Positions 1 through 63,418 are shown, counted from the first letter of the stretch. The stretch: 64,000 nucleotides of DNA from Vitrella brassicaformis CCMP3155 (GCA_001179505.1 CDMY01000688.1:186001-250000), one strand, 5' to 3'. The notes: generated by a model from the sequence alone, not told the origin. Numbers and translations: made by a program.

Positions 1-84
1 ACCGGCAAAATGTGTGTGCCAGCCAATCCACCAGCATAGCACCGACCCACAGACGATGCGTTCTTTTACCCCTTTCTGTGTCAG

Positions 85-1930: not shown

Positions 1931-4900
1931 TCAGTCATCCACCCTATCGCACGGCTGCGGCAGCCCCAGCTCGAGGTCGATCGACACCACTCGCTCAGCA
2001 GCAGCATCGTCAGCTGCACCTTGACCCTGCCACTGCTGCTGCTGGTGGTGCTGCTGCTGATCTATCGCCTCCTCCCTCCTTGTCTCTTGTGGTACCACAC
2101 CAGCACCGACCATCCATGGGTTCACCAACCCTCCCTGTGGCTCTCTCGGCGACGGCAGCGCCTCGCTCCCTCGCCGCACCAGACGCTCAGGACCCCTCTG
2201 CACAAATGCCATCCCGCCACCCCCACCACCCCCACCACCTCCAGCAATCCTATCTCTCTCCTCTGCTGGGGGCGAGGGCACCGAGCTATCGGTCGGGATG
2301 TCCACCGGCGGCACATTCCCCTTGGCTAAGCCCTCAAAGAGCTGCGCCTGCTCTCTCTCCCCCTCTCTCTCCCTCTCCTCCTGCTGGTGCTGCTGGTGCT
2401 GCTGTGGGTGGGGGAAGAATGACACTGACGCATACTCTTGGTGGTCGAGAGACGGTGCGCTCCACGGCATCTCGGCGGGAGGCGGTGTAAAGGCGGGGCC
2501 GCCGCTGACATTGCCGCGATAAGACTTGGCAACGATGGTGGCCTCCTTCGGGTCTTCCCTGCTGATGCCGGGCGCGCCTCTCCTGCCCCTCAAAACAAGC
2601 CTTGGTCGGCTGCTGTCAGGCGAGAGGCTGTTGGGCAGGTTGAGCAGCGGCATCGTCACGGAGGACACAAGATCTTGCGATGCCGGGGAGAAGGGTGGTG
2701 GCGCAGCGGGGCTCTCCTTGGCCGCGGGGTCGGCGACACGTTCGCTCATCGGTGAGGCCCCCCGCCCTTGGCTGCCCGTCTCGCTCGTCCCTTGTAGTGG
2801 CTGTGGCTGTGACAACACCCCTGCAGCACCACTAGCACCAGCACCGACAGCAGCAGCAGCTGCTGCTGCTGCTGCTGTGGGTGACTCCTCCGCCCCGCTC
2901 TCTGTGTTGATGGTGGGGTCCGATATCGGCCGCAGCATCGGAGTCGTGTTCGAGACCTCCTCTCTGCTGCTGCTCACGGCCGGGAAGAACGACGGCGGCG
3001 ACCCCGACCCACTCATGGGCGTGAAATACTCCTCCCGAATCGCCGCAGCACCAGCAGCAGTAGGCCTGACGTGCAGCGGTGACGGCGCACGTGGTGGGAC
3101 CAGAGGCAGCCGTGGCGGCGGGCTCGGTGACGGCCCGGAGCTGCAACAGCTGGCAGAGGAGCCACCATCTGACGCGACAAGAGGCCCAACGGTGGCCAGG
3201 CCTGGTTGGCGATCGGCTTGTGACGGGACCGATAGCATGCCGTAGGAGTGCGGCGGCATCGTCATAATGGGCGTCGTTGGTGCAGGCAGGTGCATCCCCA
3301 CACCGCCCCAGTAAACCGGAGGGTTCATGAGAACGATCGTCGACGGCGGTGGGGGGTGGGCCAATGGCGGCTGATGCTGCTGGGGCTGCTGGGGCTGTGG
3401 GTGTGAGTGTGGGTGGGGATGGGTGGTGGTCTCACTGTCCGTCTGCACGCCTACAGTCTGCCCCTCTCTTCGTGGTCGTTGCCGCCGCTCCCGTTCCTCA
3501 GACGGCTCTCGTCTGCTCCTCCCCCTCTCAGTCATCATGCGAGCAGAAGTGCCCGGCATCCGGTCACGCAGAGGTGACGGCCCACCCAGCCGCACAGCCG
3601 TCACCGCCGGACTCGGCTCACGTGTGTCCGCAGGCCCAGGCCCAGCCCTGCCCCTCTCCTCATCCCCCTCTCTCTCTCCCTGCTGTTCAAGACTCCTCCG
3701 AAGGTCCATCTCTAGTGCACGGGAAGCCTCCAAGCTCGCCGAGAGGGTCAGGCTGTCGGCCAGGTCAACGGCCGTCCGGGTGCCGACCCGGCCCTGGCTG
3801 GAAAAGTCAGTGGGCGACGCTCTGCTGTCCATTGCAGGGGGTAATGGTGGTGGGGAGAGTTTGTCTGGTCGGGCTGGCGAGCCGTTCGAGCGAGAGAGGA
3901 ATGAGATGGACGTGGTAGGGGATCCCTGCTGCTCGACGCCGCCATCGACGTTGGGCTGCTCGGTCCGGTAAGACTGAAACCGCTGCCGATGCTCGCCGTT
4001 GTCCCCCCCAAAGCCACAGCCGGCACTCCTCTCTGATGACACGTTGGATATGGATGTGGACACGTGACCAGTCTCGCGCGACGGCACCCGCATGTGAGCA
4101 GGCGGCTGCGGCAAGAGCCCCCTCAACTCCGATGTGCGCATCCGCTGCTCTGGCGGCATGTCGCGAATGGGCCCCCTCTCGGGCGGGAAGGAATGTCCTC
4201 GTGCGGGCGGGATGGTCACACGCAGACGGCCGGGTGGCGGGGGGGAGGTCGGGATGGTGGTGGGGTGGTCGATTGGCGTGACGAGACTCACGTCACCGCT
4301 GCTGGATTCCCGGCTGGACTCGTCGGCCAGAGGGGGAAAGAGGTGCTGGCGGGATGGATAGGTGTGTGGGTGCGAGCGGGGCAGCGGTAGCTCGGGCAAG
4401 TTGTCCGTCTGGATGGTCAGCTCCCGCCTGATCGCTCCCCGCTGACCATCACCACCAGCACCGCCGTCGCTTGCCTCTCGATCCTCTCCTTCCCGCTCCT
4501 GCGCATCCCTCTGCCTCAACGACCGCATTATCTCCTCTATCTCGGCAAGCCGACCGCCCTCACCGTCTCCCTCACCCTCTCCCTCTCCCCCGTCGCCGTC
4601 GTCCTCCACCACTCGGGGCGAGTGGGTCGGTGGCGACAGCGGCGTCACCCTCTGCTGCCGTGCGCCACCGTCGGCGGCATCTCTCTCCTGTGGCGGCGAT
4701 CCGATGGCCCCGTTGCTGTGCAGCGGCGCTGGCCGGGCGGTCTCGGGTGTGGGGCCGGACGATGGTCGGAGCATGGCCGAGGCGGGTGAAGCCGCGTGTG
4801 TGGTGACGATGTGGCTCGAGACGGGCACAAGGGGCGCCTTACCCGCAGTGGGGGCTGATGCTTTGCTGCCCTGCCGGTGCGGGACCTGGGTGAAGGGGAG

Positions 4901-51143: not shown

Positions 51144-52189
51144 GGCCCGGGGCAAGTGCTCCACATCACTTCCTTCGAAGTGATGCCTTGTGTTGACTAT
51201 GGTCAACACAAGGCAGCATTTGCTGTTACCTGTGACAATGCTGCCCGGCATTTGTAAAGTGGGGGGCTGTGTGGCGTGAGGGTGTGAGATTGATGTGCAT
51301 GGACTAGGGGTGACGTGTTTGCATGGTTGTTCCTCGTGTCAATAGCCTTTTCTCTAGCAAGCGCAGCAACACGGCACTGACGGCAGGGCCACTTTCTGAG
51401 TATCCACTTCCTTCCCATGCAGGTCAGTCGTATCGTTGGCAGCACTTTCACTTTTCGAGGCGGCCGGCTTATCGATAGGCATGCATCAGTGTCACATGTC
51501 AAAGTGTGCGTGGGTGCGTATTCACCTCCATTCAGATCCAGAGCGAATCATCCATCATCACACCGCAAGATTGATAGAAAGGTGAACAATCCGAAGGCAC
51601 GGCTGCCCATGCACTCATTACTGCTTCTCTCTCTGTCCGCCTTTTTGCATCCTCGCGTTGGAGGCGGAAACATCCGGCCACTGCCGCCATTGTCAAGAAT
51701 CAGCACCCAGGGGCTCTCTCAGGCCACGGCCCTGGGGCAATGCATAATGATCGTGCATGACTCGTTGTCGACGGCCAATTGTGGAGGAATCAGCACACAG
51801 CCGAGCTCCGACTTTGTTTGTTTCATTGCAGAGAGGAGAGAGTGGGGGTACTGAAGCGGTGAATCGCCAAGAAGCGAACGGAGACGGCAAATGGAAACTG
51901 TTGCTTTTGTCTGTTATTCCCTGCTCTTCTATCAGCGTGTGTTCTCTCTCTCGTCCCCTGTTGTCTCAACGCGATGCCTGCACGTGGGAAACCGCTAGTG
52001 GCGAGATTTTCGCGAGCCGAGACGGAGACAAAATGATTTACGAGCTCGCAGTCACTTTTCACATTTTCCGTCCGCGTTCGGCTTTCCAGCCTTGTTTCGG
52101 CCACATCTCCTCCGGTTCTCTTTCCTTTCGGCTGGTTGTTGGCTTGTGTTGTCCGCTGCGTCCTCCTCTACTCCTCCCAACTCGTCAGA

Positions 52190-53870
52190 ATGTCGTCCGC
52201 CACTTCTTTCTTCGACCACCGTACCCCGGGAGAGGCCTCGTTTGGTGGTGCCCTGCCTCCTGTGGAGCGGCTGGCGTCTCCCTGGCGCCTGCCGAGTGCG
52301 CACGCCCCTTCTTTTCGCCCAAACCGACCTCCAGCAGGTGAGTACATATGCGTGTGGCCTCGCGCGTCATCTCTGTTGGGTGCGGTGATGGTGTGGTGTG
52401 TGGATGATTTGTAGGGATGAATACGTGGTGCATTTCGTTGCCATGGGTGTGCTCAGATGCCCTCTGTTGCCGTGTTTGTGCGTGCAGATGAACTGGCGGC
52501 TTTTTCTTTTTATACCCGTCTCTTTTTCTCGACGCATTTCTCTTTAGGTGGGTGAGGTGGGTGACTGCCTCATTGAGTTTGGTGTTGACGCGCACGTCAG
52601 AGTCCCTGTCTGCTGCTTTCCAGATATGCGTTTCCTTTGGCCCGACGAAAAGAAAACCGAGAAAAAAAGACAGATTTTAAGCATTTTTCTAATCAATCTT
52701 TCTGTCTTGCAGCAGGCCGGGAAGCTTCACTTCGATGACAACAACCTGCCCATGGAGGAGACATGCGCATGAAACACAATGCCTTGGTACCTCGCTCCAG
52801 AAATTTTCTTGGCTCGGCCACAAGGCCACGCAGCAAGACGGTACACATTGACCGAAAAACGCGCCAGCCATCACGCCACCTTTGATGCGGTGTGGTGTGT
52901 GTGCGTTGTGGATGGGTGAGTGCAGGTCTGAAGGACGACATCGACACGACATTCGGCGGGCCCACCAAGCCATACCTCGCTCCAGAGGTTGTCTTGGGTG
53001 TGCCGTACGACAAGAGAATCGACCTCTCAAGCCTGGGACAGCTTGTGGCCAACCACCCCCCACCAGCCACTTACAAGAAAGGGGTTCCGGGACTTGGAAA
53101 GCAGCGGGGAAGGACACAAAGGGCGGTGTGCTGTGTCTCGACAAGATCGACGAAGTCTACACGCAGCAAGACGGTACACATTAACCGGAACACGGAACAC
53201 ACGCCATCACGCCACCTTTGATGCCCTGTGGTGTGTGTGCGTTGTGGATCGGTGAGTGCAGGTCTGAAGCACTACATCGACTGGACCAAGCCATACCTCG
53301 CTCCAGAGGTTGTCTTGGCTGTTCCGTACGAGTCAATCGACCTCCTAAGCCTGGGACGCCTTGTCGCCGGTCTGCTGTTGAAGAAGCCCAAGCACCACCC
53401 ACCAGCTACCTTTAAGAAGGGGGTTCCAGGACTTGGCAAGCAGCGGGAAAGGACACAAAGGGCCAAGGAGGCCCGACTGCGACGACAGGCAAGAAAACAA
53501 TTGGATCACTCATAGCACAGATTCTCATGAGATGTGTGTGTGTGTCTGTCCGCTCGCCCTGCAGGCCTGCCTCGACACAGCTCGGCCATCAGGGGATGTT
53601 GGCAAGTATGGTAAGGATGGGAAGGCATATATGTGGACTGTCTTCATCGCTCTGTGTGTCTGTGTCTCAAGGTTGAGGGTCGTGTGTTACGGCCGTTCAA
53701 GACAGGGCGACTTCGCCCATGGCTGCCTACATTTTATATCCACAGTCCCATTCTTCAGTCGTCTATTGCTGCTGTTGTCGTGTGCTGTGGTCGCAAGTCA
53801 TATCGTGCTCTTGAGACAAGGCGGCGTAGGTCAAGGCACTGGCCATTCCGGCACTTCTCGCTCGTAAGAA
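52190..53870 (+). pseudogene. Chimeric or degenerate unit containing three Ser/Thr kinase activation-segment fragments (subdomains VIII-IX only)
   Basis: TCA*NTMPWYLAPEIF (in-frame TGA), TTFGGPTKPYLAPEVVLGVPYDKRIDLSSLG and TKPYLAPEVVLAVPYESIDLLSLG. No Gly-loop, VAIK, HRD or DFG nearby. Confidence 0.7.
52830..53465 (+). repeat. Diverged tandem duplication, period ~333 bp (intron plus kinase-fragment exon)
   Basis: GCAGCAAGACGGTACACATT...GCCATCACGCCACCTTTGATGC...GTGAGTGCAGGTCTGAAG...CCAAGCCATACCTCGCTCCAGAGGTTGTCTTGG starts at 52830 and again at 53163. Confidence 0.92.
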
Positions 53871-54354
53871 TGGATTGAAGGGAAATGTCAGCCAGCCTGT
53901 GTGTCTCTGCGTGTCATGGTTTAGAGACGCCCTGGCTTCCTCTTCTGGCGGCGGCGACGGCGACACCCTCAAGCCCATCGCCGACGACGACAGCCTCAAC
54001 AAATTACCGGGAAAGCCGAGAGGCAGCGAAGCAGGGAAATCGGGTGAAAGGGGCACGATGAGGTGCATACTACATGAGAGAAGGCATCCAAACATCCCTC
54101 TTTCGCGGTCCGTGTTGGTTTCAGGGCAATCGGCCCACAAGCTCGCACGAGGTGGAGCTGGTTTCTCTTTCTCTTTCCCCACGTTGTTCTCGCGCTCCGT
54201 AGAGTTAGACTAAGTTATTCTCACCATGAATAACGCAGCCCACGACTTGGCCCACCGCCAGGCCACCTCCTCCGCACGGTTCGGCGACTCGCCTTACGAC
54301 ACACTCTGATGCAGCACACACTCTGCCGGCCCTCATGTGTGTGCGTGGTGTGGG

Positions 54355-55110
54355 CAGGTCGCTCTTGAGTTCACGGGCAACGTGCTGCCGCGCCACGGCT
54401 TTGTGTGCCACCGGGCACTGGAGACCGTGGAGGGCGCGACGACCGTGGAGGTGGTGGACCAGGATGATTGGGAGCCCGACCCAGATGACGCCGAACAGCC
54501 CGACCCGCTGGTGTTCGAGCACTTGCCCCCCAACGCATTCTCCGCCGCTACACTCCTGTGGATTCACACCATCAATGGGCTCGCGATTGCCCGAAGGCTG
54601 GTGACCAAGATGCCCGCCGTCAAACGCATTGACCTCTCCCAGCCCTACCCGACAGAGGAGGACGCGGTGGGGGTGCTGCAGGCGGTGGGCGGCGAGAGGG
54701 AACTGGAGCGTTTCGAGGCCAAGTGGGTGAAGGGTGTGGGCGAGGGGGGGCTGACGTGGGGCGACATAGCGGACCAGCTGCCGACCATCTCAAAAGTGGA
54801 TGTTACTGTAGAAGGTGAGCTGCGAACAATTACCTCCTCAGCTTACCGGCTTATTCATTCGGTGCTGTGCTGTCTGTGTGTCTGTCTGTCTGTCTGTCTG
54901 TGTGTGCAGTGCCTGACGATTTGGGTGATGGCGATGCCGCCGGTGAGTTCGGCATCGCCTGCGTCACCGAGGGATCAAGGAGCTCTCCTTCCGGCCGTGG
55001 CCCGGCGACGCCTTCAAGCGGCTGGTGGATGAGCGGACGCATGGCGACGCCATCGAGGGGCTGGACGGGCGATATGACATTAGCTGGGGGGGATATTTGG
55101 GACAACATGC
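54355..55110 (+). pseudogene. Internal fragment of a lineage-expanded hypothetical protein family (helical/LRR-like), frameshifted and fused to a dynein fragment
   Basis: Well-formed exon VALEFTGNVLPRHGFVCHRALE...LPTISKVDVTVE|VPDDLGDGDAAGEFGIAC with host codon usage. The frame then breaks. No intact start. The family assignment is from recollection of chromerid proteomes and is not verified. Confidence 0.5.
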
Positions 55111-55174
55111 GAAACGGCCTCCCTCCTTGATGTGTGTATCTGTGTCATATATGGGCTTCTCGTGTGTCTGGCAG

Positions 55175-55520
55175 GGCGATCGCCTTGTTCCACGAGAGGG
55201 TCTACGTGATGAGCCAGGAGCTGATGCGCGCCGCCAAGATGTACAACCACGTAACACCCAGAGACATACTGGTCTTCATCAAACACTTCCTTGGTACGTT
55301 TCTCGCGCCACTCAAACGACACACATACACCATGGCTAGGTGGCTGTGCGATTTGCTGTGTGTGGTATGTGGTGTGTGGCAACAAATCAGGTTTGGTGAG
55401 GGAGAAGCGGGAGCTGACCAAGTTCAAGGACACGGAAGAGCAAGTGGACGAGATGCTGGTCTGGCTGGCCGAGAAGGACAAGGACCTCGCGGTCCTTGCC
55501 GCCAAGAAACGACGCACGGG
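55175..55520 (+). pseudogene. Cytoplasmic dynein heavy-chain fragment (end of AAA4 / start of stalk), two exons, with an internal deletion
   Basis: KMYNHVTPRDILVFIKHFL|GLVREKRELTKFKDTEEQVDEML aligns with the DHC1 segment [45 protein letters not shown], minus ~11 residues. Confidence 0.8.
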
Positions 55521-55579
55521 TGTGTTTTTGTTTCCTTTTCCGTTAGCTTAGCATTTCCATCATCGCATCGTCTTAACCA

Positions 55580-56640
55580 TGAATACCGCCAACCCCCACT
55601 TCCACGGAAGCCGCCAGCCTGCCGCTGTTGTAACCGCCAAGACCTCGTCATCCCCTGCCCTGACCCTCAAGCCCATCTCAGACGAGGGCAGGGACGCCCA
55701 GAAGGCCAAGGACGCCCAGCCGCCCACGCCCACGGCCAACGGCAGCGATGCGACGGCGGACGGGGGGCTACATGTACATGATGGAGAGGGCGGGGGAGGG
55801 ACTGGTGATGTGGCGGTGTCGCGGATGGATAGCTCTGCGTTCAAGGCGCTGTGTGGCAGGGCCGGCGAGACCAAGAAGAGGGGCGACATCAACTGGCAGC
55901 TTAACAGGACTCGGTAGGCAAGGCGGACAGCGCAGAGCAGACCCCGACACGTATACATATACATGTATGTTATGTGTGTATGCATGCATGTATGTCCTGC
56001 ATGTGTGTCCTGTTGTCTTGTCTGTCCCTGCCTGCGTGTGTCAGCATTGCGGTGGCCGAGTGGGAGGCGGCCTTGAAGCTGCTAGAGTCCCTGCCCTGCG
56101 CGTCGCTGCCGGCCCCCAAGGACACTGACGAGAGATTCTGTGCGAGGTGAGGTCACCGACCGACCAACCGACCGACCGACCGACAGGCCACACGCACATC
56201 TATCTGTCTTGTGTTGTGTGTGTGTATTGGGTGTTTGGTCAGTTGTTGGCGGGCGACGCCGATGCGGCCCAGGAGGACACCAGCAAGGAGGACGAGGCCA
56301 CCCCCGAGCCCCTTGCCACCGAGCCCCCCGCCCCCGAGCAGGCAGCGGCCACCGCCCCGAAGAAACAGAAGAAGAAGAAGAAGAAGAGCACCAACAAGAA
56401 CAAGAACAAGGACAAGGCGCCAAAGGAGGCGGCGGGGGAGACTCTGCCATCCGAGGCCCCCTCTCTTGTCCCCGCCAAGACGCCGTCATCCCCTGCCCTG
56501 ACCGTCTTCAAGCCGCCCATCCTTCCAGAGGAGGCCAAGGACGCCCAGAAGGGCAAGAAGAAGCCGCCCACGCCCACGGCCAACGGCACCGAGACCGCCC
56601 TCGAGGGAGCGGCCACCGGCAACAAGAAGAAGATGGCATT
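55580..56640 (+). pseudogene. Chimeric low-complexity ORF made of duplicated AKT(S/P)SSPALT..KP..DAQK..PPTPTANG modules and a poly-Lys tract
   Basis: The module appears at ~55630-55750 and ~56470-56590, with a short remnant at ~53965-53995. The exon runs directly into the TACATTTTATAT segment at ~56636. Confidence 0.6.
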
Positions 56641-57175
56641 GGTGCCTACATTTTATATCCAGACGAGATTTTATCTCATACCCAGAGGTATCCGCAGGTC
56701 TGCATCTTTGGATTCATGTGTATACAGCATGAATATATGCCTCCTTCTTGGGTGTCGTATGTGTGAGGCTGCCCAGGAAGGAGCCCGCGTGTGTTACGGC
56801 CGCTCAAGACAGGGCGACTTCGCCCATGGCTGCCTACATTTTATATCCATAGTTTCATTCTTCAATCGATTGCCCGTCGACTCATACATACAAGCGCTTC
56901 TACAAGAACATTTCCACAAAAGGTACACACTTTATCGCCACATCTAGCCAGCTAGATTTTGTGTGTCCCCATGTCTGTCTCCGCATTCGTTGTGCTTTAG
57001 GTCGGTATCAGCTTGATCGAATATATGGGGGGCCTGATCCAATGGTGCACTAGTTCGAGGGCCCGATGTGGACAAGAAGCGGTCCGAGATGCTGAGACTC
57101 ACCGTACACGTCCTTATGCGCGTCGATGTGATTTGTGTGTGCCTTGGCTCCCTGTCTGTGGTGGTGGTGTGTCAG

Positions 57176-57525
57176 GCGAGTTCCGTGTCAAGATTAGCGA
57201 GTTGGACGACAGCCTAAAGATGGCGCTTGCCAACGGCAAGGGCAACAGCACCACCCTAGACGACCACTCCGTCATGGCCATACTGGAGACGTCCTTCGCC
57301 GACACATCCTTCATGAAGAGCCTCCAGAGCGCCCTCCAATTCGGCACACAGCTCCTCGTCGAGGTAAGATGACCAAATAGCATCTCACACCCATCCCCCC
57401 CATCCATCCACACGTGTGTGTGTGTGTGTGTGTCCTGTCTGGCAGGATGTTGAGCGTGTGGATCCCATACTGCTGAACCCGGTGCTGACCCGCAAGCAGG
57501 GCGGGCGTGTGCTCCTCGTCCAGGT
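57176..57525 (+). pseudogene. Cytoplasmic dynein heavy-chain fragment (AAA5 and post-AAA5 buttress region) in permuted order
   Basis: GEFRVKISELDDSLKMALANGKGNSTTLDDHSVMAILET (cf. [37 protein letters not shown]) is fused to TSFADTSFMKSLQSALQFGTQLLVE|DVERVDPILLNPVLTRKQGGRVLLVQVG (cf. [52 protein letters not shown]). Confidence 0.85.
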
Positions 57526-58329
57526 GGGTGAGCTTTGAAAGCACAGACATCTTCAATCTATGTGTGTCAGGCCCAGGACAACGTGCCCCATGTGACCAAT
57601 CAATCAACACAGACACACACATACACACACACGCACTCACACAGAGGGAGAAGGCAGTGCTGCAGGCAGGTGTCTGACTGTGTGTCTCTTATGTTGTATG
57701 GTCTATATCAGGATTGGACACACCCTCTCGTGGCCAGGTCTGTGGTCCTCACTCTCAAGAAGATCATCAAAGCCAAAGGCAAACACGACCCACAACACAC
57801 AGGCACTAAACCGACATGCGTCCAGCCTGTATATGTCTTGTTCAGCTGCGGGCCGCAGTTTGGTATGGCTAGGTGGGTTGCTGTGGCCGGAGGCCGTCTC
57901 CCTAGCGACGGCCACCGGCCACACGACTTAGAGGCCGACCCATGACCCCTCTACCACCTTGTCCAAGACCGCGCAGAAGGCCGAGCAGGAGGAGAAGGCC
58001 GAGGACGACGCGGGTGCTCTGAAGGAGGGGGGCAGGCGGATGTCCAACCATGCCCGGCGAATACAAGAGGGAATCAGGGGGAGAGAGGAGCGAGAGGCCG
58101 CAGAGCAGAGGATAAGGGCGGAGAGGGTCGCAGCGCGAAAGGAGAGGAAAAGGCTGGGGAAGCCGCAAAGAAGAAGACGGCCAAGGATGAGAAGGAAAGA
58201 AAAGGCTGTAGGGAAGGCAGGCCTGAAGTGCTTCATTTGACGCTTGTTTGTCATATTCCCTCAGGAATGCAGCTGCCGTCTGCGTCGACCAAGATCGAGG
58301 CACCCAGCCAAGTGCCTAAGTTCGTCGCC

Positions 58330-58600
58330 GCCCCGGCAGGTGATTGTTGGCAACGTAAAGCGTGTCCTTGATCCCTATGGCTACTCTCTAGAGGACATCC
58401 AAGAGCTTGTCGAGATATGCGGATACGACCAGAGAGAGGTACGTACACACACCTGCAGCCAGCAGACACACGAGACACCAAAGCTCATCACACACACACT
58501 CCCATTTACCGCATGAATCATCTGTGGGTTTCCCTCCCTTCCTTGACTCCTTAGGTCGAGATTGCTGTGTGGAACATCTTGCAGGACCAGAAGGGCCACG
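58330..58600 (+). pseudogene. UBA/CUE-like three-helix domain fragment (two exons)
   Basis: VIVGNVKRVLDPYGYSLEDIQELVEICGYDQRE|..IAVWNILQDQKGHE has a UBA-like pattern (V..V......I...L..C..D....V..I). Confidence 0.5.
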
Positions 58601-58618
58601 AGAGCGGGAAGCCACCAC

Positions 58619-59150
58619 GCGAGAGCGGGCCAAGGCCAAGCGCGAGGAGTTGCAGAAGGAGCAGCAGGAGGCCGCCAAGCAGCGCCACATACCCGGCCTC
58701 ACGGCAGCTCCCACTGCGAACGCATACGGAAGAGGGAGCTGCGGTGACGTGAAGCGGAGATGGGTCGTGAAGGGAGCGATTCCGACATGAAGCTGCTCGA
58801 GAGGGCGGCATGGACATCATGAAGGCAGTCGGCGTGCACCCACCTGCTGCTGCCGCCGAGGCTGCAGCGCCCAAGCCTTCTCAGCCCTGCCGCAGACTTG
58901 CACCGCCTGCCACCGTCCGGCCACCGCACCCCGGCAAGATATGGGTCGTGAAGCAAGCGGCGACATGAAGCTGCTGTGTGTTTATGTTTTGCGTGTTTGT
59001 GTTTATGGTTTGTGATGTGGGGGTCTTGCTGAGACCTGCCCCAAGGCCGCCAAGCGAGAGCGGGCCAAGGCCAAACGGGAAGAGTTGGAGAAGGAGCAGC
59101 AGGAGGCCACCAAGCAGTGTGACGTCCCTGGCCTGATAGCAGCTTTCCAT
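58619..59150 (+). repeat. Local duplications of a K/E-rich module (RERAKAKREEL.KEQQEA.KQ) and of a GGGTCGTGAAG...CGACATGAAGCTGCT segment
   Basis: GAGAGCGGGCCAAGGCCAA...GAGTTG.AGAAGGAGCAGCAGGAGGCC.CCAAGCAG at ~58621 and ~59056. The second segment is at ~58762 and ~58943. Confidence 0.85.
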
Positions 59151-60039
59151 ACGGCCTGCAGCAGGCCATTCAGCGTCGAAAGCGGCCCAGCGGCAAGGCC
59201 CCGGTAGGCAGTAAGTTCGAATTGTATAAGCAAGCTTTATACCTCCACCACACCCGGGAATGTAATGTCTCTCATTATCCGTTGCTTGCTGCGTGTGCTT
59301 GTCTGTTTGTCTGTCTGTCTGTCTATGACTTTTAGGGAGGGAGGATGAGATGGGTGCCAGTACGCAAACGATGGATTGGGTCAAGGAGGGCTTTGACGGC
59401 ATGCGAAAGAAAAGCGGCAGGCCCCCCCCGGTAAGAAATTGTGCGTATCATGACAAGATATGTGCTTGCACTCGGTTGCTGCGTGTGGTTGTCTATGCCG
59501 TGCAGGGCATGAAGTGGGTGCCGATTCGGGCTTGGAAAGCAGCGGAAAGAACCCACCGAGCGAAGGAGGCCAGACAGAGACAGCAGGCAAAAAAACGCGA
59601 TGAAGCGCGGTAATGTAAGTCAGTTCAATTGTGCCTCTTATGTCTCGCAGATGCATCGGTGCCTACATTTTATATCCAGACGAGATTTTATCTCATGTGA
59701 CGAAGCTGCGGTCTGTCGATACCCACAGGTATCCGCAGGTCTGCATCTTTGGATTCATGTGGTTACAGAATGAATATGTGTTTTTTGACAGATGCCGGTA
59801 ATTGCGCCGCATCTGGAAAACAATTGGAGCCACGCCTTTGATGACCTGATTCGCAAGACGGCCGACGATTATCACGTGAGGTGGGAGGACTATCAAGAGC
59901 GCGGCGGTTACGACAACAGAATTGAAGTGAGCTTCGCAGGTGAGTGTACACGTAAAGGAACGACACAATGTCGTAGATGACTGTGGTCCTGTCTGGACCC
60001 GCAAGCACCGAAACAAATGTGTCATCCACCACGGCCTCT

Positions 60040-60480
60040 GCCGCCAGGCAGCAGTGCACCGGGGAACTCTTCACGGCTCTCAGGAACCTCATTGATGAGG
60101 AAGAAGCGGCTGCTGGCGTGCCCGAGGAGGACAGGTTTGCCTCCTGGTTCGGCGTCGGCTACGTCCACGAGATGCGGTGCATTGGGTGTGGACACGGGTG
60201 GTTTGGCGCCAGTCAGCATGAGGGCAGCGTGCTGGTGTGTGTGGATGAGACGATGGAGATGCACAAGGGCGAGTGGGACCTCATGAGGGCTGTCGACAGG
60301 GCGGTGAGACGGCCCGAGCCCAAGGAGGCCGTGTGTGGCGCACGAGAGACATGCGATTTGTGTGGCGCCCAGCTGCTTTGTCAAAGGTCAGCTCGACAGG
60401 AAGAGACCAAAGACCCATTGCCATATGTTCGTCTCCTTTTTGTTTTTGTTATCAGGCGGTCGTTCTTCGACTCACGCGAA
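60040..60480 (+). pseudogene. Ubiquitin-specific protease (peptidase C19) fragment: Gln-box to fingers Zn-ribbon, lacking Cys and His boxes
   Basis: QQCTGELFTALRNLID...FGVGYVHEMRCIGCG...E.SVLVCV...LMRAVD...TCDLCG...PYVRLLFVFVIRRSFFD follows the USP pattern QQDA.E...L / F.G......C..C / L...L / C..C / P..L.I.L.RF.FD. Confidence 0.7.
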
Positions 60481-61384
60481 GTGGGCACCAATGGCTGATT
60501 TCATCGTCTCGCTGCCTGTCGCCCCCGCCGCCACCTCCCACCCCTAGCTGACCATATCAACAAATCTGCCATATCAACACGGTGAGCGACCGATCACAAC
60601 ACAACACAACACAACGCAACGCAAGGCAACAACATTCGCGCGATAAGCAGAGGATGTCTTTATTTGTGTTCCCCCGCATCGCGCATGTGGGGCGCTGTGT
60701 GTATGTCTGCAGAGGGAGGAGAATGTCGGCATTTGCTGTCTACATTTTATATTCGTGGCATCTTCTTCAATTCCTCCGCACCCTATCAGTGAATCGATTC
60801 GGCTGGTGACAGGAGTGGTGCCTGTCCGTCTGCAAGAGCTACCCCAACTATGACGTCTTCTTCGTCGGCTTGACACACACCGACACACCCAACGCCACGA
60901 TCCCTTCTGCCTCCCTCTCCCTCTTCGTCACACACCAACACCAACACCAACACCAACACCAGCAGCTGAGGTGTCAATCATCGTGTCTCACGTTCTTGCG
61001 TCCGAGATGGAGCTGTTCGCTGGCTTCCCGGATCCCGCGCGCCCGCCATCAGTACTGCACTGGGAGCATTTCAAGACCGAGGCAAAGAAGATGCTCCATC
61101 TGACGGACGAGGCGTTTGAGAACTTGCACATCGGCGCCCTCTTGGACCGCACCGCAGCCGTCGTCCAGTGGGGGCAGGCTATAACACAGCAACAGGTATT
61201 TATCCAGAATACAAGTCAGGCCTGGACATGCACTCGCACTTAGACAGGCCAACGGTGTGGTCGCTGGATGTGTGCCTTTTTGCAGCTTTCTGCGTTGAAG
61301 CTCAGTGAGGCCCCTTCCCTGGGGAACATAGCATAGGTGCGGCCATTGGCACACGGAGATTGAGCGATGGCGTTTCCACCGACA

Positions 61385-61422
<38 letters not shown>

Positions 61423-63024
61423 CCTATCTCTCCGCACAGGTTGACCTGACGGGCGGCGCCGCTGCTGCGGCATCAGGACCGGTTTCGGGGCCTCCGCGAT
61501 CCAAGGTGTGTAGAAGCACATACCCACAGGCCCCCTTTTGTCGCTCTCTCACTGTGGGTGCCTTCCTCGCTCTGCCAGGCGCCTCCTATTCTAGTGCGCC
61601 CACCGCCGCCCAAGCACCCGTGTAAGTGTGCGCACCTGCGACAGCAGCAGGCAGCCACAGAAGAGGGACACTGTCTGTGTGTTGTCTCTTTGTGGTGTCA
61701 GTCGAGATAGAGAAGTACACTCCGTGGATGCTAGGCCAGCGAGAGTCATCGCGGGTACGTATGAGCACGCAGATGGGGGAGAGCACCTACGCGTCATCCG
61801 CCCCCACACACCACACGTGTCTTGCCTGTTGGTTGCCTTGTCTGTCTTTCTTTCTGTCTATCAGGCGCCACTCAAGCAGAGACCCGGTGAGGCGGGGCTG
61901 GAGACGCTGGAGACGCCCCCTATGCCCATCCCTCCGCCTTGACATGCAGCACCGGGTGTGCCAAGGCCCAAGATGGCCTTCTACGGTACGTCCATTCAAA
62001 CCCGCACTTGAGTCCTCTCAATGATTGTGTGTGTATGTGGGATGCCTCCAGAGACGTGCCAGCGTTGGCAAGAGGGCCGTCTGCAGGACCCCATGGCGAC
62101 CATGCTGCAGCCGCGACACACGGAAGGGCCGACAGGGAGGCCTGCACACCGCCACGCCGCAAGACTGCCGCGCCCACGCGACGTCAGCCAGCGGCAGGGG
62201 CACTTGCTTCTAGCCGATCGCTGTTTACATTTTATATCAGCGGTCTTCTTCCATTCCACTGCACCAGCGATCGAGCTGTAGTACCCATGCCGAGTATGCA
62301 TTTATCCGCGCGTCACGTGGCGCGTGTGTGACCTTTTCTCAGACCCTTCTGTCGCCCCACATACGGTCGCGCGTGTTTGTGCGTGTGTGCGTGTGTGTAT
62401 CGACTCGACTCCTGCCCGTGGGGCACTTCAAGTCGATATGACTCCGAGGGGCAGAAGTCGATATGTCTCCCTCCACAGCCTGTGCATGACATCAATCCAC
62501 AACCCGCGGAGTCCCAATCCTCTTTGATGGTCTCTGCAGGTAGGCACAGACACATCGGCCTCATCCCTCCGGTAAGATAGAATATGGGACTGAGGGGTGA
62601 GTCGTTGCGGCGAGAGAGGGTTTGGCTGATGTAATCTCGTGATGGTGTACGTGTGTTGGTGGTCGGCATCATGATCATGCTTGTCTGTGCATGAGGTGCA
62701 CCCGTTGTGTCCACTGCGTTGTGCGGCCTGCCTGGCGCTCCTCCCCTTGATGTGCGTACGTGTACATGTATAACACTCTGTGTGACACGTGTGTTTGCAA
62801 GTGAATGCATCAATTGCTGCATGGGGGATCGCGCACGCGACCTGGCAGCAATGGCCGTGACAACGCGTACGAGGAAATTGACGCCGCATGTTTTTGGCCC
62901 CCAGCATGAGACCTGTGGGCGTCTTTTCAGAATTTCACTCCATATTCTACACTCCGCTCGTCGCAAGGCTTCTATTGACCGTCCATCCAGTATCCACACC
63001 CACTGCCAGTCTGACACACTCGCC

Positions 63025-63418
63025 ATGAAAACCGCTGTCTCCATGCTGTTTGCCGTCGCCCCTCTGCTGCTCCACGTCATGGCCGCCACTGGCAAGCCTG
63101 TTCGGCCCCAGCTGAGCGCTAGCCTCGCGCTCATCCAAACCCAGGCGCAGCGGGCAAAGGCCATGGCCCTCGCCGCTAACGAGATGGCGCTCACCGCTGA
63201 CGAGACGGCAGCCACGGCTGTCAAGACCATCAACGCGGCAGAACAACAGCTCAAATATCTCGCAGGTACATGCGTTGTGTGCATCGGAAGCAATGCACAG
63301 CTTGGATGCACGGGTTTACATAACCGATGTCTTTCTTGCGACAGGCCAATGGCCCACCAGCATGGAACCGCCGACTGACAAAGGCCGGCAGAACGCATGC
63401 GCATGGATCCGTACATGA
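63025..63418 (+). CDS. Small secreted Ala-rich helical protein (or 5' fragment of a secreted-protein gene); 2 exons
   Basis: Signal peptide MKTAVSMLFAVAPLLLHVMAA, then ...AQRAKAMALAANEMALTADETAATAVKTINAAEQQLKYLA|GQWPTSMEPPTDKGRQNACAWIRT* across a GT-AG intron (63266-63345). Confidence 0.55.

What the first reader, a model, noticed from the sequence alone, without database searches (positions are those of the whole stretch)
52190..62300. Array of ~3-kb chimeric cassettes built from unrelated, intron-retaining gene fragments: candidate gene-capture/shuffling element
Seen in sequence: after ~51 kb of intact genes, 10 kb contains no complete gene. It holds pieces of a kinase (x3), a lineage-expanded family, dynein heavy chain (x2), a UBA-like domain and a USP, mixed with recurring K/E-rich modules. 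Every recognisable piece is on the + strand and keeps its introns, so capture was at the DNA level rather than by retroposition. TACATTTTATAT segments fall at 53728, 56647/56835, 59664 and 62226, dividing the region into ~2.6-3.0-kb units with different cargo. In two units the same AKEAR..RQA.K module (53410-53500, 59515-59600) sits just upstream of the motif. Established: Helitrons and Pack-MULEs capture intron-containing fragments from several genes, and Helitron cargo is biased to one orientation. Inference: this is a tandem array of non-autonomous capture elements, or a recombination-driven exon-shuffling factory, with a conserved end. No Rep/helicase, transposase, TIR or TSD was found here, so the mechanism is open.
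Basis: partly seen in the sequence, partly recalled or inferred. Interest (0 to 1): 0.8.

Follow-up and report, generated by a model that had tools for sequence, protein, structure and literature searches.

The report
Chimeric gene array sharing one end-signal
Ten kilobases of the alga Vitrella hold five or six same-direction, partly broken genes stitched from copied pieces of other genes, each followed by a nearly unchanging 22-letter word that occurs about 1,300 times in the genome just behind genes; it is not a jumping element, and what the word does is unknown.

Summary
The sequence observation largely holds.

The dynein pieces are DNA-level copies of a dynein gene on contig C477, 75-84% identical, with introns kept and the order permuted. 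Window 61010-61425 copies the 5' end of a gene on C438. The family domain is frameshifted, and a kinase piece carries an in-frame stop. UBA and USP identities were not confirmed.

The capture-transposon reading is not supported. The word is the core of a 22-nt block with 1,325 genome copies at up to 3 mismatches, against 0 in the control. Its flanks are unrelated on both sides, it has no inverted partner, and it lies near none of four checked Helitron Rep loci.

In 56 distinct copies from other contigs, gene-like composition runs up to the block and drops after it. Splice acceptors pile up just upstream. I read the block as a class-specific gene-end element (a terminal-exon or 3'UTR element).

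The block's function is not settled.

This scan has met the same motif on other DNA of this genome (s1-221653, s1-218434, s1-242742).

The parts
52000..52780 (+). 'Head' module: 5' region, first exon (ATG at 52190) and first intron of a multi-copy family. Its second exon carries an in-frame TGA at 52770-52772.
   Evidence: At least 45 genome copies at 71-91% identity. In most copies the similarity continues further upstream, so this is not a sharp transposon end. Other copies continue differently after position ~52775. TGA checked.
52779..53463 (+). Three kinase activation-segment (APE) pieces, made by a ~336-nt tandem duplication of an exon plus its intron.
   Evidence: Repeat families D5, D6 and D8. 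52827-53124 matches 53160-53463 at 77%. Pfam Pkinase E 0.013 and 0.019, below the curated cut-off.
53429..53498 (+). K/R-rich AKEAR module. Its twin lies at 59528-59596.
   Evidence: 79% identity over 70 nt.
53681..53761 (+). 81-nt element with a small GC hairpin plus copy 1 of the 22-nt block (53719-53740). Its twin lies at 56788-56868.
   Evidence: 94% identical pair. Only 7 copies genome-wide, nearly all on this contig. It is the joint at which flanking modules are reassorted with the sister array.
54074..55551 (+). Annotated model P0003: lineage-specific family domain (54349-54816) whose C-terminal part is out of frame, fused to dynein piece A (55176-55491).
   Evidence: mapping; frameshift seen against paralogues P0005 and P0006. 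for the dynein homology, which includes the intron.
55579..58790 (+). Annotated model P0001 (466 aa): K-rich exons, then read-through of block copy 2 in frame VPTFYI, then permuted dynein pieces and K/E-rich exons.
56638..56659 (+). 22-nt block, copy 2.
   Evidence: Part of the module 56631-56739, which matches 59649-59780.
56826..56847 (+). 22-nt block, copy 3, 188 nt after copy 2. It lies inside an intron of model P0001.
57043..57531 (+). Three dynein heavy-chain pieces in circularly permuted order, with introns kept.
   Evidence: On the gene strand of locus L098 (C477:231600-235200), parent positions run 3173-3241, then 3276-3448, then 2722-2950. Identity 77-84%. Junction at a GAGAC/GAAGAC microhomology near 57285-57290. 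The parent is a dynein gene by Pfam.
58340..58610 (+). Identity not confirmed.
   Evidence: No Pfam or PDB-sequence hit. A 72% paralogue lies at C688:169492-169909.
58611..59144 (+). Local duplication of a K/E-rich exon (58611-58709 and 59046-59144).
   Evidence: 84% identity.
59655..59676 (+). 22-nt block, copy 4. A splice acceptor lies 4 nt upstream.
59792..60498 (+). Annotated model P0002 (170 aa). Possible USP-like finger region, weakly supported.
   Evidence: Atlas look-alikes 0.90-0.91. Not hit by Pfam UCH.
60582..60712 (+). Predicted 131-nt intron in the 3' untranslated part of P0002, ending 19 nt before block copy 5.
   Evidence: GT..AG read from the sequence. It fits the genome-wide excess of donors at -125..-100 and of acceptors within 25 nt upstream of the block. 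No RNA evidence.
60732..60753 (+). It lies 234 nt after the stop of P0002.
61010..61425 (+). Copy of the 5' end (ATG, two exons, introns) of a gene on contig C438.
   Evidence: 85% identity over 431 aligned positions. Homology ends in a (CT)n(TG)n intron microsatellite. The 4 kb fetched around the C438 copy hold no copy of the 11-nt core of the block.
62217..62238 (+). 22-nt block, copy 6, at the end of the array. The next gene, which opens with a signal-peptide-like start, begins near 63025.

Best explanation
Window 52.0-62.3 kb is a tandem, same-direction array of five or six small lineage-specific transcription units of Vitrella brassicaformis. Most of them are chimeric or decayed.

Shown: the units were assembled at the DNA level. 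The processes were segmental duplication (an inverted sister array lies 75 kb away on the same contig), local tandem duplication, and ectopic joining of intron-bearing pieces of other genes at microhomologies and intron microsatellites.

Shown: the recurring AT-rich word is not a property of this locus or of a transposon. It is the core of a 22-nt block, consensus ATCGCTGCCTACATTTTATATC, with a weaker tail reaching about 50 nt. The block sits on the gene strand immediately behind about 1,300 genes of a particular class. In many copies it opens a terminal exon after a ~100-nt intron.

Inferred: the block acts at the RNA level as a class-specific 3'-end element, either a processing signal or a binding site that controls stability, translation or silencing. 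Because every unit of this class carries it, it also serves as a patch of shared homology at which neighbouring units recombine. That would help explain the reassorted cassettes.
For: Mosaic and DNA-level copying:
- Dynein pieces match the parent at 75-84%, with intron homology and permuted order.
- 61010-61425 is an 85% copy of a gene start on C438, ending in an intron microsatellite.
- There are tandem duplications inside the region.
- The family domain is frameshifted, and one kinase piece has an in-frame stop.

Sister array and reassortment:
- Homologous modules lie in scrambled order at C688:153-164 kb on the opposite strand.
- Around the shared 81-nt element the combinations are U1+D1 and U2+D2 here, against U1+D2 and U2+D1 there.

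The block:
- 280 exact 14-mers against 0-1 in the control, and 1,325 copies at up to 3 mismatches against 0.
- Information jumps from 0 to 2 bits at position 1 and falls after position 22.
- The flanks are unrelated. There is no consistent reading frame and no RNA structure.

Gene-end position, in 56 distinct copies from other contigs:
- The upstream 380 nt have GC 0.59 and GC skew +0.12. Downstream they have GC 0.54 and skew -0.01 (Wilcoxon p = 5e-6 and 2e-5).
- Acceptor-like sites are 4-5 times enriched in the 25 nt upstream, and donors about 3 times at -125..-100.
- In locus L058 a kinase-like ORF stops 13 nt before the block. P0002 stops 234 nt before copy 5.
- The first unit of the array has no block upstream of it, and the last unit has one downstream.
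- Ordinary genes in window 1-52000 have nothing resembling the block.
Against: - No RNA data could be used, so no transcript end, splice junction or expression level was seen.
- The public model P0001 reads through copy 2 as coding sequence and places copy 3 in an intron. If that model is right, the block is not always terminal.
- In 27 of 62 copies a GTRAG donor lies within 110 nt downstream, so some block-bearing exons may be internal.
- In a tandem array a signal behind one gene is also in front of the next. The composition argument is statistical: 44 of 56 copies have positive skew upstream, not all of them.
- An intron placed after the stop codon would normally expose a message to nonsense-mediated decay.
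- Invariance over 22 nt is far stricter than any known polyadenylation signal.
Confidence: 0.5

Rival explanations
1. One reading: a tandem array of non-autonomous Helitron-like or Pack-MULE-like elements that captured gene fragments, with the motif as the conserved terminus.
For: - Intron-bearing pieces of several unrelated genes lie on one strand.
- Helitron Rep genes exist in this genome, with about 8 loci over the Pfam cut-off. The genome paper lists 18 kb of Helitron sequence.
- Position 1-3 of the block reads A-TC, which is what a Helitron 5' end in an A|T target would look like.
- A small GC hairpin lies just before two of the six copies.
- The permuted dynein piece could derive from a circular intermediate.
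Against: - Conservation is a 22-nt island. Both flanks are unrelated among 62 copies, with no family-level terminal homology running inward for more than ~50 nt.
- There is no CTRR 3' end and no inverted copy.
- The hairpin is absent from the other copies.
- Copies sit regularly behind genes and just after splice acceptors.
- No 0-1-mismatch copy lies near the Rep loci on C200, C219, C227 or C239.
- Parent-copy divergence of 15-25% with local reshuffling fits duplication and recombination.
Confidence: 0.08
2. The block marks the 5' side of the following unit: a relic of a 22-nt spliced leader carried back into the genome with recycled messages, as in dinoflagellates, or a leader exon or initiator of the downstream gene.
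For: - The length is 22 nt, with a sharp 5' edge and unrelated sequence after it.
- It lies on the gene strand in same-direction arrays, with an AG acceptor often just upstream.
- There is a loose resemblance to the dinoflagellate leader around ATTTT (my own knowledge, not tested).
- In this window each annotated start lies 116-800 nt after a copy.
Against: - Gene-like composition abuts the block upstream, and low-GC, unskewed sequence follows for ~350 nt.
- The first unit has no copy upstream.
- The units keep introns.
- No sub-family with a conserved donor and downstream part, as leader-RNA genes would have, was seen among 62 copies.
- No paper in the library reports leader trans-splicing in chromerids.
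Confidence: 0.08
3. The block is a DNA-level site for a site-specific recombinase or endonuclease. Units between blocks would be mobile cassettes, integron-like or mating-type-cassette-like, and breaks at the site would draw in foreign fragments.
For: - Co-oriented units are separated by a near-invariant site.
- Modules are reassorted at the element that contains the block.
- A circularly permuted insert is present.
Against: - The reassortment joint is an 81-85-nt shared element, so ordinary homologous exchange suffices.
- Among the 62 copies sampled genome-wide, the pairs that are similar upstream are similar downstream too (8 pairs; none is similar upstream only). Four pairs are similar only downstream.
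- The fragment junctions that could be mapped lie away from the block.
- No recombinase gene was seen in the region.
Confidence: 0.07
4. Assembly artefact: the mosaic arises from collapsed or mis-joined repeats.
For: The region is rich in repeats and microsatellites. The assembly is a short-read shotgun assembly in 1,064 scaffolds.
Against: - Paralogous copies are 72-94% identical, not identical.
- The same module types recur in an independent sister array.
- Junctions are in frame at microhomologies.
- The public annotation spans the junctions.
Confidence: 0.03

Closest known systems
Helitron and Pack-MULE gene-fragment capture (maize, rice)
   Same: Intron-bearing pieces of several unrelated genes are joined in one orientation and annotated as chimeric genes.
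   Different: There is no terminal architecture: no 5'-TC/CTRR-3' with hairpin, no terminal inverted repeats, no target-site duplication. The recurring word is a 22-nt island behind ~1,300 genes, not an element end. The genome's Rep loci are not associated with it.
Conserved 16-mer in the 3'UTR of Trypanosoma brucei VSG genes (own knowledge, not tested here)
   Same: A short, AT-rich, essentially invariant word lies in the 3' part of the genes of a large, recombining, pseudogene-rich, co-oriented set. It doubles as the downstream homology for gene conversion.
   Different: Here the genes carrying it belong to many unrelated families. Its role in message stability is untested, and it often follows an intron.
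Relict spliced leaders in dinoflagellate genes (own knowledge; no chromerid report found)
   Same: 22 nt, near-invariant, on the gene strand, with unrelated flanks, in tandem arrays.
   Different: Composition places the block at the 3' side of genes. The genes keep introns, and no leader-RNA gene was found.
Bacterial integron cassette arrays (attC sites)
   Same: Co-oriented cassettes with different cargo are separated by a recurring site.
   Different: No integrase is present. The site is conserved in sequence rather than in structure. No breakpoint was mapped inside it, and the host is a eukaryote whose cassettes contain introns.
Short conserved gene-end motif linked to polyadenylation in Blastocystis (own knowledge)
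   Same: A conserved short word at a fixed place at gene ends in a protist.
   Different: That motif serves most genes. This one serves roughly 6% of genes and is absent from the ordinary genes of this window.

Membership tests
Helitron (non-autonomous) | 5'-TC and 3'-CTRR termini inserted between host A and T | tested here: not met
   The block reads A-TC at its 5' edge, but no CTRR end exists. Conservation spans both sides of any possible junction.
Helitron (non-autonomous) | GC-rich hairpin 10-12 nt before the 3' end in all copies | tested here: not met
   A 6-bp hairpin is present before only two of the six window copies. It is absent from the 56 distinct copies taken from other contigs.
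Helitron (non-autonomous) | Ends shared with an autonomous Rep/helicase element of the same genome | tested here: not met
   Rep loci exist. No 0-1-mismatch block is listed near those on C200, C219, C227 or C239. The other Rep loci could not be fetched.
Pack-MULE / other cut-and-paste elements | Terminal inverted repeats and target-site duplications flanking the cargo | tested here: not met
   The only inverted repeats in 50-64 kb are microsatellites. All six motif copies are on one strand.
Retroposed (processed) copies | Loss of introns relative to the parent | tested here: not met
   Introns are retained and alignable to the parents on C477 and C438.
Gene-end (3' terminal exon / 3'UTR) signal | Lies on the gene strand downstream of coding sequence, at the gene-to-spacer transition | tested here: met
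   Composition and skew shift at the block in 56 distinct copies from other contigs. Examples are L058 and P0002.
Gene-end (3' terminal exon / 3'UTR) signal | Transcripts carry it in their 3' part, or end a fixed distance after it | not testable with these tools
Spliced-leader relic | Leader-RNA genes: the same 22 nt followed by a donor and a conserved intron part | tested here: inconclusive
   Five of 62 copies have a donor within 4 nt, but their downstream parts differ. Only about 5% of all copies were inspected.
Integron-like cassette system | Homology between cassettes in different arrays ends inside the recombination site, and a recombinase is present | tested here: inconclusive
   Reassortment occurs within an 81-85-nt shared element and cannot be placed inside the 22 nt. 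No recombinase was seen in the window.

The most novel reading that the evidence does not exclude
The 22-nt block is a DNA-level recombination or break site, or the footprint of a templated addition. It would define mobile gene cassettes in a eukaryote. The same-direction arrays of reassorted, fragment-laden units would then be the product of a site-directed cassette-shuffling system, with circular intermediates such as the one suggested by the permuted dynein piece.
Probability: 0.07. Interest if true: 0.9.

Novelty: new variant of a known kind. Interest (0 to 1): 0.5.

Why it matters
Chromerids are the free-living relatives of malaria-type parasites and of dinoflagellates, two groups with very unusual gene expression.

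A 22-nt word kept almost letter-perfect behind some 1,300 genes, yet absent from ordinary genes, points to an undescribed layer of control. That layer could be 3'-end formation, message stability, silencing or recombination. It would be tied to the fast-evolving, duplication-prone part of the genome.

The word is easy to test with existing culture strains and standard RNA sequencing.

The mosaic itself shows how new chimeric genes are assembled from intron-bearing pieces without a transposon.

Tried and rejected
- **Protein-coding motif.** Rejected. No reading frame is preferred, stops follow at random distances, and two sister modules are read in different frames (56647 against 59664).
- **Shared C-terminal peptide (WVPK) across the class.** Rejected. 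It is seen only in this array family.
- **RNA structure around the block.** Rejected. Fold energies are no better than for control segments.
- **Degenerate general polyadenylation signal.** Rejected. Window 1-52000 has no sub-word of 9 nt or more, and TGTAA or AATAAA are not positioned relative to the block.
- **Rfam.** Nothing relevant in 51-64 kb.
- **Other organisms.** No exact match in JGI metagenome contigs or in viral contigs. No paper in the library contains the word in a relevant organism.
- **The head module as a sharp transposon end.** Rejected. Similarity continues upstream in most copies.
- **Breakpoint test among 62 copies.** Few informative pairs.
- **USP and UBA identities.** Pfam, PDB sequences and a genome-wide UCH scan gave nothing.

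Tools and limits:
Rep loci and more motif copies could therefore not be read.
- Spliced proteins were not joined. Exons were searched one by one by reference.

Full report
**Organism and place.** The window is G000:C688:186001-250000 of a 72.7-Mb assembly in 1,064 contigs. Those figures match the published Vitrella brassicaformis genome. The public proteins encoded here are named Vitrella brassicaformis CCMP3155. Nothing here is human or viral.

**Checking the observation.**
- TACATTTTATAT occurs six times, all on the + strand, at 53728, 56647, 56835, 59664, 60741 and 62226. Chance expectation is 0.01.
- Spacings are 2919, 188, 2829, 1077 and 1485 nt, so the '3-kb cassette' picture is only partly right.
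- The AKEAR module pair is real.
- The three kinase pieces are copies of an activation-segment region created by a ~336-nt tandem duplication of exon plus intron. Of the two scanned, neither reaches the Pfam cut-off (E 0.013-0.019). The piece in the head module has an in-frame TGA.
- The lineage-specific family is real. The window's copy is frameshifted relative to paralogues P0005 and P0006.
- UBA and USP identities could not be confirmed.

**The pieces are DNA-level copies.**
- A whole-genome DNA search finds the parent of the dynein pieces at C477:231.7-235.1 kb, at 75-84% identity.
- The alignments run through introns. The parent's exons hit Pfam AAA_8, the MT stalk and AAA_9.
- In the window the three downstream pieces lie in circularly permuted order. 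They are joined in frame at a GAGAC/GAAGAC microhomology. This agrees with earlier notes s1-248808 and s1-231271.
- Window 61010-61425 is an 85% copy of the ATG, two exons and the introns of a gene on C438. The homology stops in a (CT)n(TG)n intron microsatellite.
The mapped junctions look like microhomology or microsatellite joins.

**A sister array.**
- Many modules of 52-62 kb recur at 75-96% identity in scrambled order at C688:153-164 kb, on the opposite strand, 75 kb upstream.
- Both arrays begin with the same head module on the side facing each other.
- Around an 81-nt element that contains the motif, the window has the combinations U1+D1 and U2+D2. The sister array has U1+D2 and U2+D1. 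This is a clear sign of exchange at a shared joint.

**The head module.**
- Window 52000-52780 belongs to a family of at least 45 copies at 71-91% identity, often in short-plus-long tandem pairs.
- Similarity continues upstream in most copies, so this is not a transposon boundary.
- Typical members continue with small exons and end, about 1.2-1.4 kb after the head module ends, in two motif-bearing exons.
- The window's copy switches to kinase pieces after 52775.

**What the motif is.**
- The exact 14-mer occurs 280 times in the genome, against 0-1 for the reversed control.
- Aligning 62 distinct copies shows a 22-nt block with consensus ATCGCTGCCTACATTTTATATC. Information rises from 0 to 2 bits at position 1 and collapses after position 22. 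A weak tail follows (YGnnGGnntnTTt), and about a quarter of copies have CCGCAC at +44..50.
- With up to three mismatches there are 1,325 copies, against none in the control.
- Flanks are unrelated on both sides. No reading frame is preferred, and no fold is favoured.
- Ordinary genes in window 1-52000 have nothing like it.
- It is absent from JGI metagenome contigs, from viral contigs and from the paper library.

**Where the motif sits.** These figures come from 56 distinct copies on other contigs.
- The 380 nt upstream are gene-like: GC 0.59, and GC skew +0.12, positive in 44 copies.
- The 380 nt downstream are not: GC 0.54, skew -0.01. Wilcoxon p is 5e-6 for GC and 2e-5 for skew.
- Acceptor-like sites are 4-5 times enriched in the 25 nt just upstream. 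GTRAG donors are about 3 times enriched at -125..-100.
- So the block frequently opens an exon after a ~100-nt intron.
- In L058 a kinase-like ORF stops 13 nt before the block.
- In the window, P0002 stops 234 nt before copy 5, with a predicted 131-nt intron in between.
- The first unit of the array has no copy upstream of it, and the last unit has one downstream.
- I therefore read the block as belonging to the end of the upstream gene. This agrees with earlier scan reports on other DNA of this genome (s1-218434, s1-221653, s1-242742). Their estimate of 1,000-1,500 copies I re-measured as 1,325.

**Against a transposon end.**
- A terminus should share family-level homology running into the element. 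Here conservation is a 22-nt island.
- There is no CTRR end and no inverted partner. The hairpin precedes only two local copies.
- Helitron Rep genes do exist in the genome (18 kb of Helitron sequence in the genome paper). No close copy of the block lies near four of those loci.

**What remains open.**
- The public model P0001 reads through copy 2 in frame VPTFYI and splices 29 nt later. Copy 3 then lies in an intron.
- The sister module at 59664 would be read in another frame.
- Either P0001 fuses two units, or some block-bearing exons are internal.
- Without RNA data I cannot tell whether the block directs 3'-end formation, binds a regulator or a small RNA, or acts on DNA.
Exons were searched singly, by reference.

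**Verdict.**
- The capture-transposon reading is not supported.
- The recombination and shuffling reading is partly supported.
- The conserved 'end' is a genome-wide, class-specific gene-end element of unknown function.
- The same motif has already been found by this scan on other DNA of this genome.

Noticed in passing
window 52000-52780; loci L010-L037: A 0.6-0.8-kb 'head' module (5' region, first exon, intron) is present in at least 45 copies at 71-91% identity. It often occurs as a short copy followed 35-60 nt later by a long copy. Introns are as conserved as exons. It is probably part of the 13 Mb of 'unclassified repeats' reported for this genome.
   Followed up: partly
G000:C688:153029-164672 (loci L002, L004-L006, L009): An inverted sister array lies 75 kb upstream on the same contig. 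It holds the same modules in a different order. The two arrays point away from each other and flank the block of ordinary genes.
   Followed up: partly
about +44..+50 from the start of the 22-nt block, e.g. window 60775-60780: A second small conserved word, CCGCAC, lies at a nearly fixed distance after the block in about 14 of 62 copies, preceded by a T-rich stretch. It is a possible cleavage-site region or a remnant of a longer ancestral element.
   Followed up: partly
window 60582-60712 and genome-wide: A short (~100-130 nt) intron often lies between the stop codon and the block. This layout would normally expose a message to nonsense-mediated decay.
   Followed up: no
proteins P0004 and P0006: Two relatives (58-60% identity) of the lineage-specific family come from ENA assemblies on 2-4-kb contigs, not from the reference genome. 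They may come from another strain or a related organism and could show whether the block is conserved.
   Followed up: no
G000:C366:90944-91594, C200:166527-167153 and about six further loci: Helitron-type Rep domains are present, and some lie in long open frames (804 aa on C366). Potentially intact Helitrons therefore exist in this genome.
   Followed up: no
window 56647/56835; L012 3463/3657; listed pairs on C214 and C336: Block copies often come in pairs 170-200 nt apart on the same strand, as if the terminal exon were duplicated in tandem.
   Followed up: no
window 63025 onward: Directly after the array a gene starts with a signal-peptide-like hydrophobic N-terminus. It is not part of the mosaic.
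   Followed up: no
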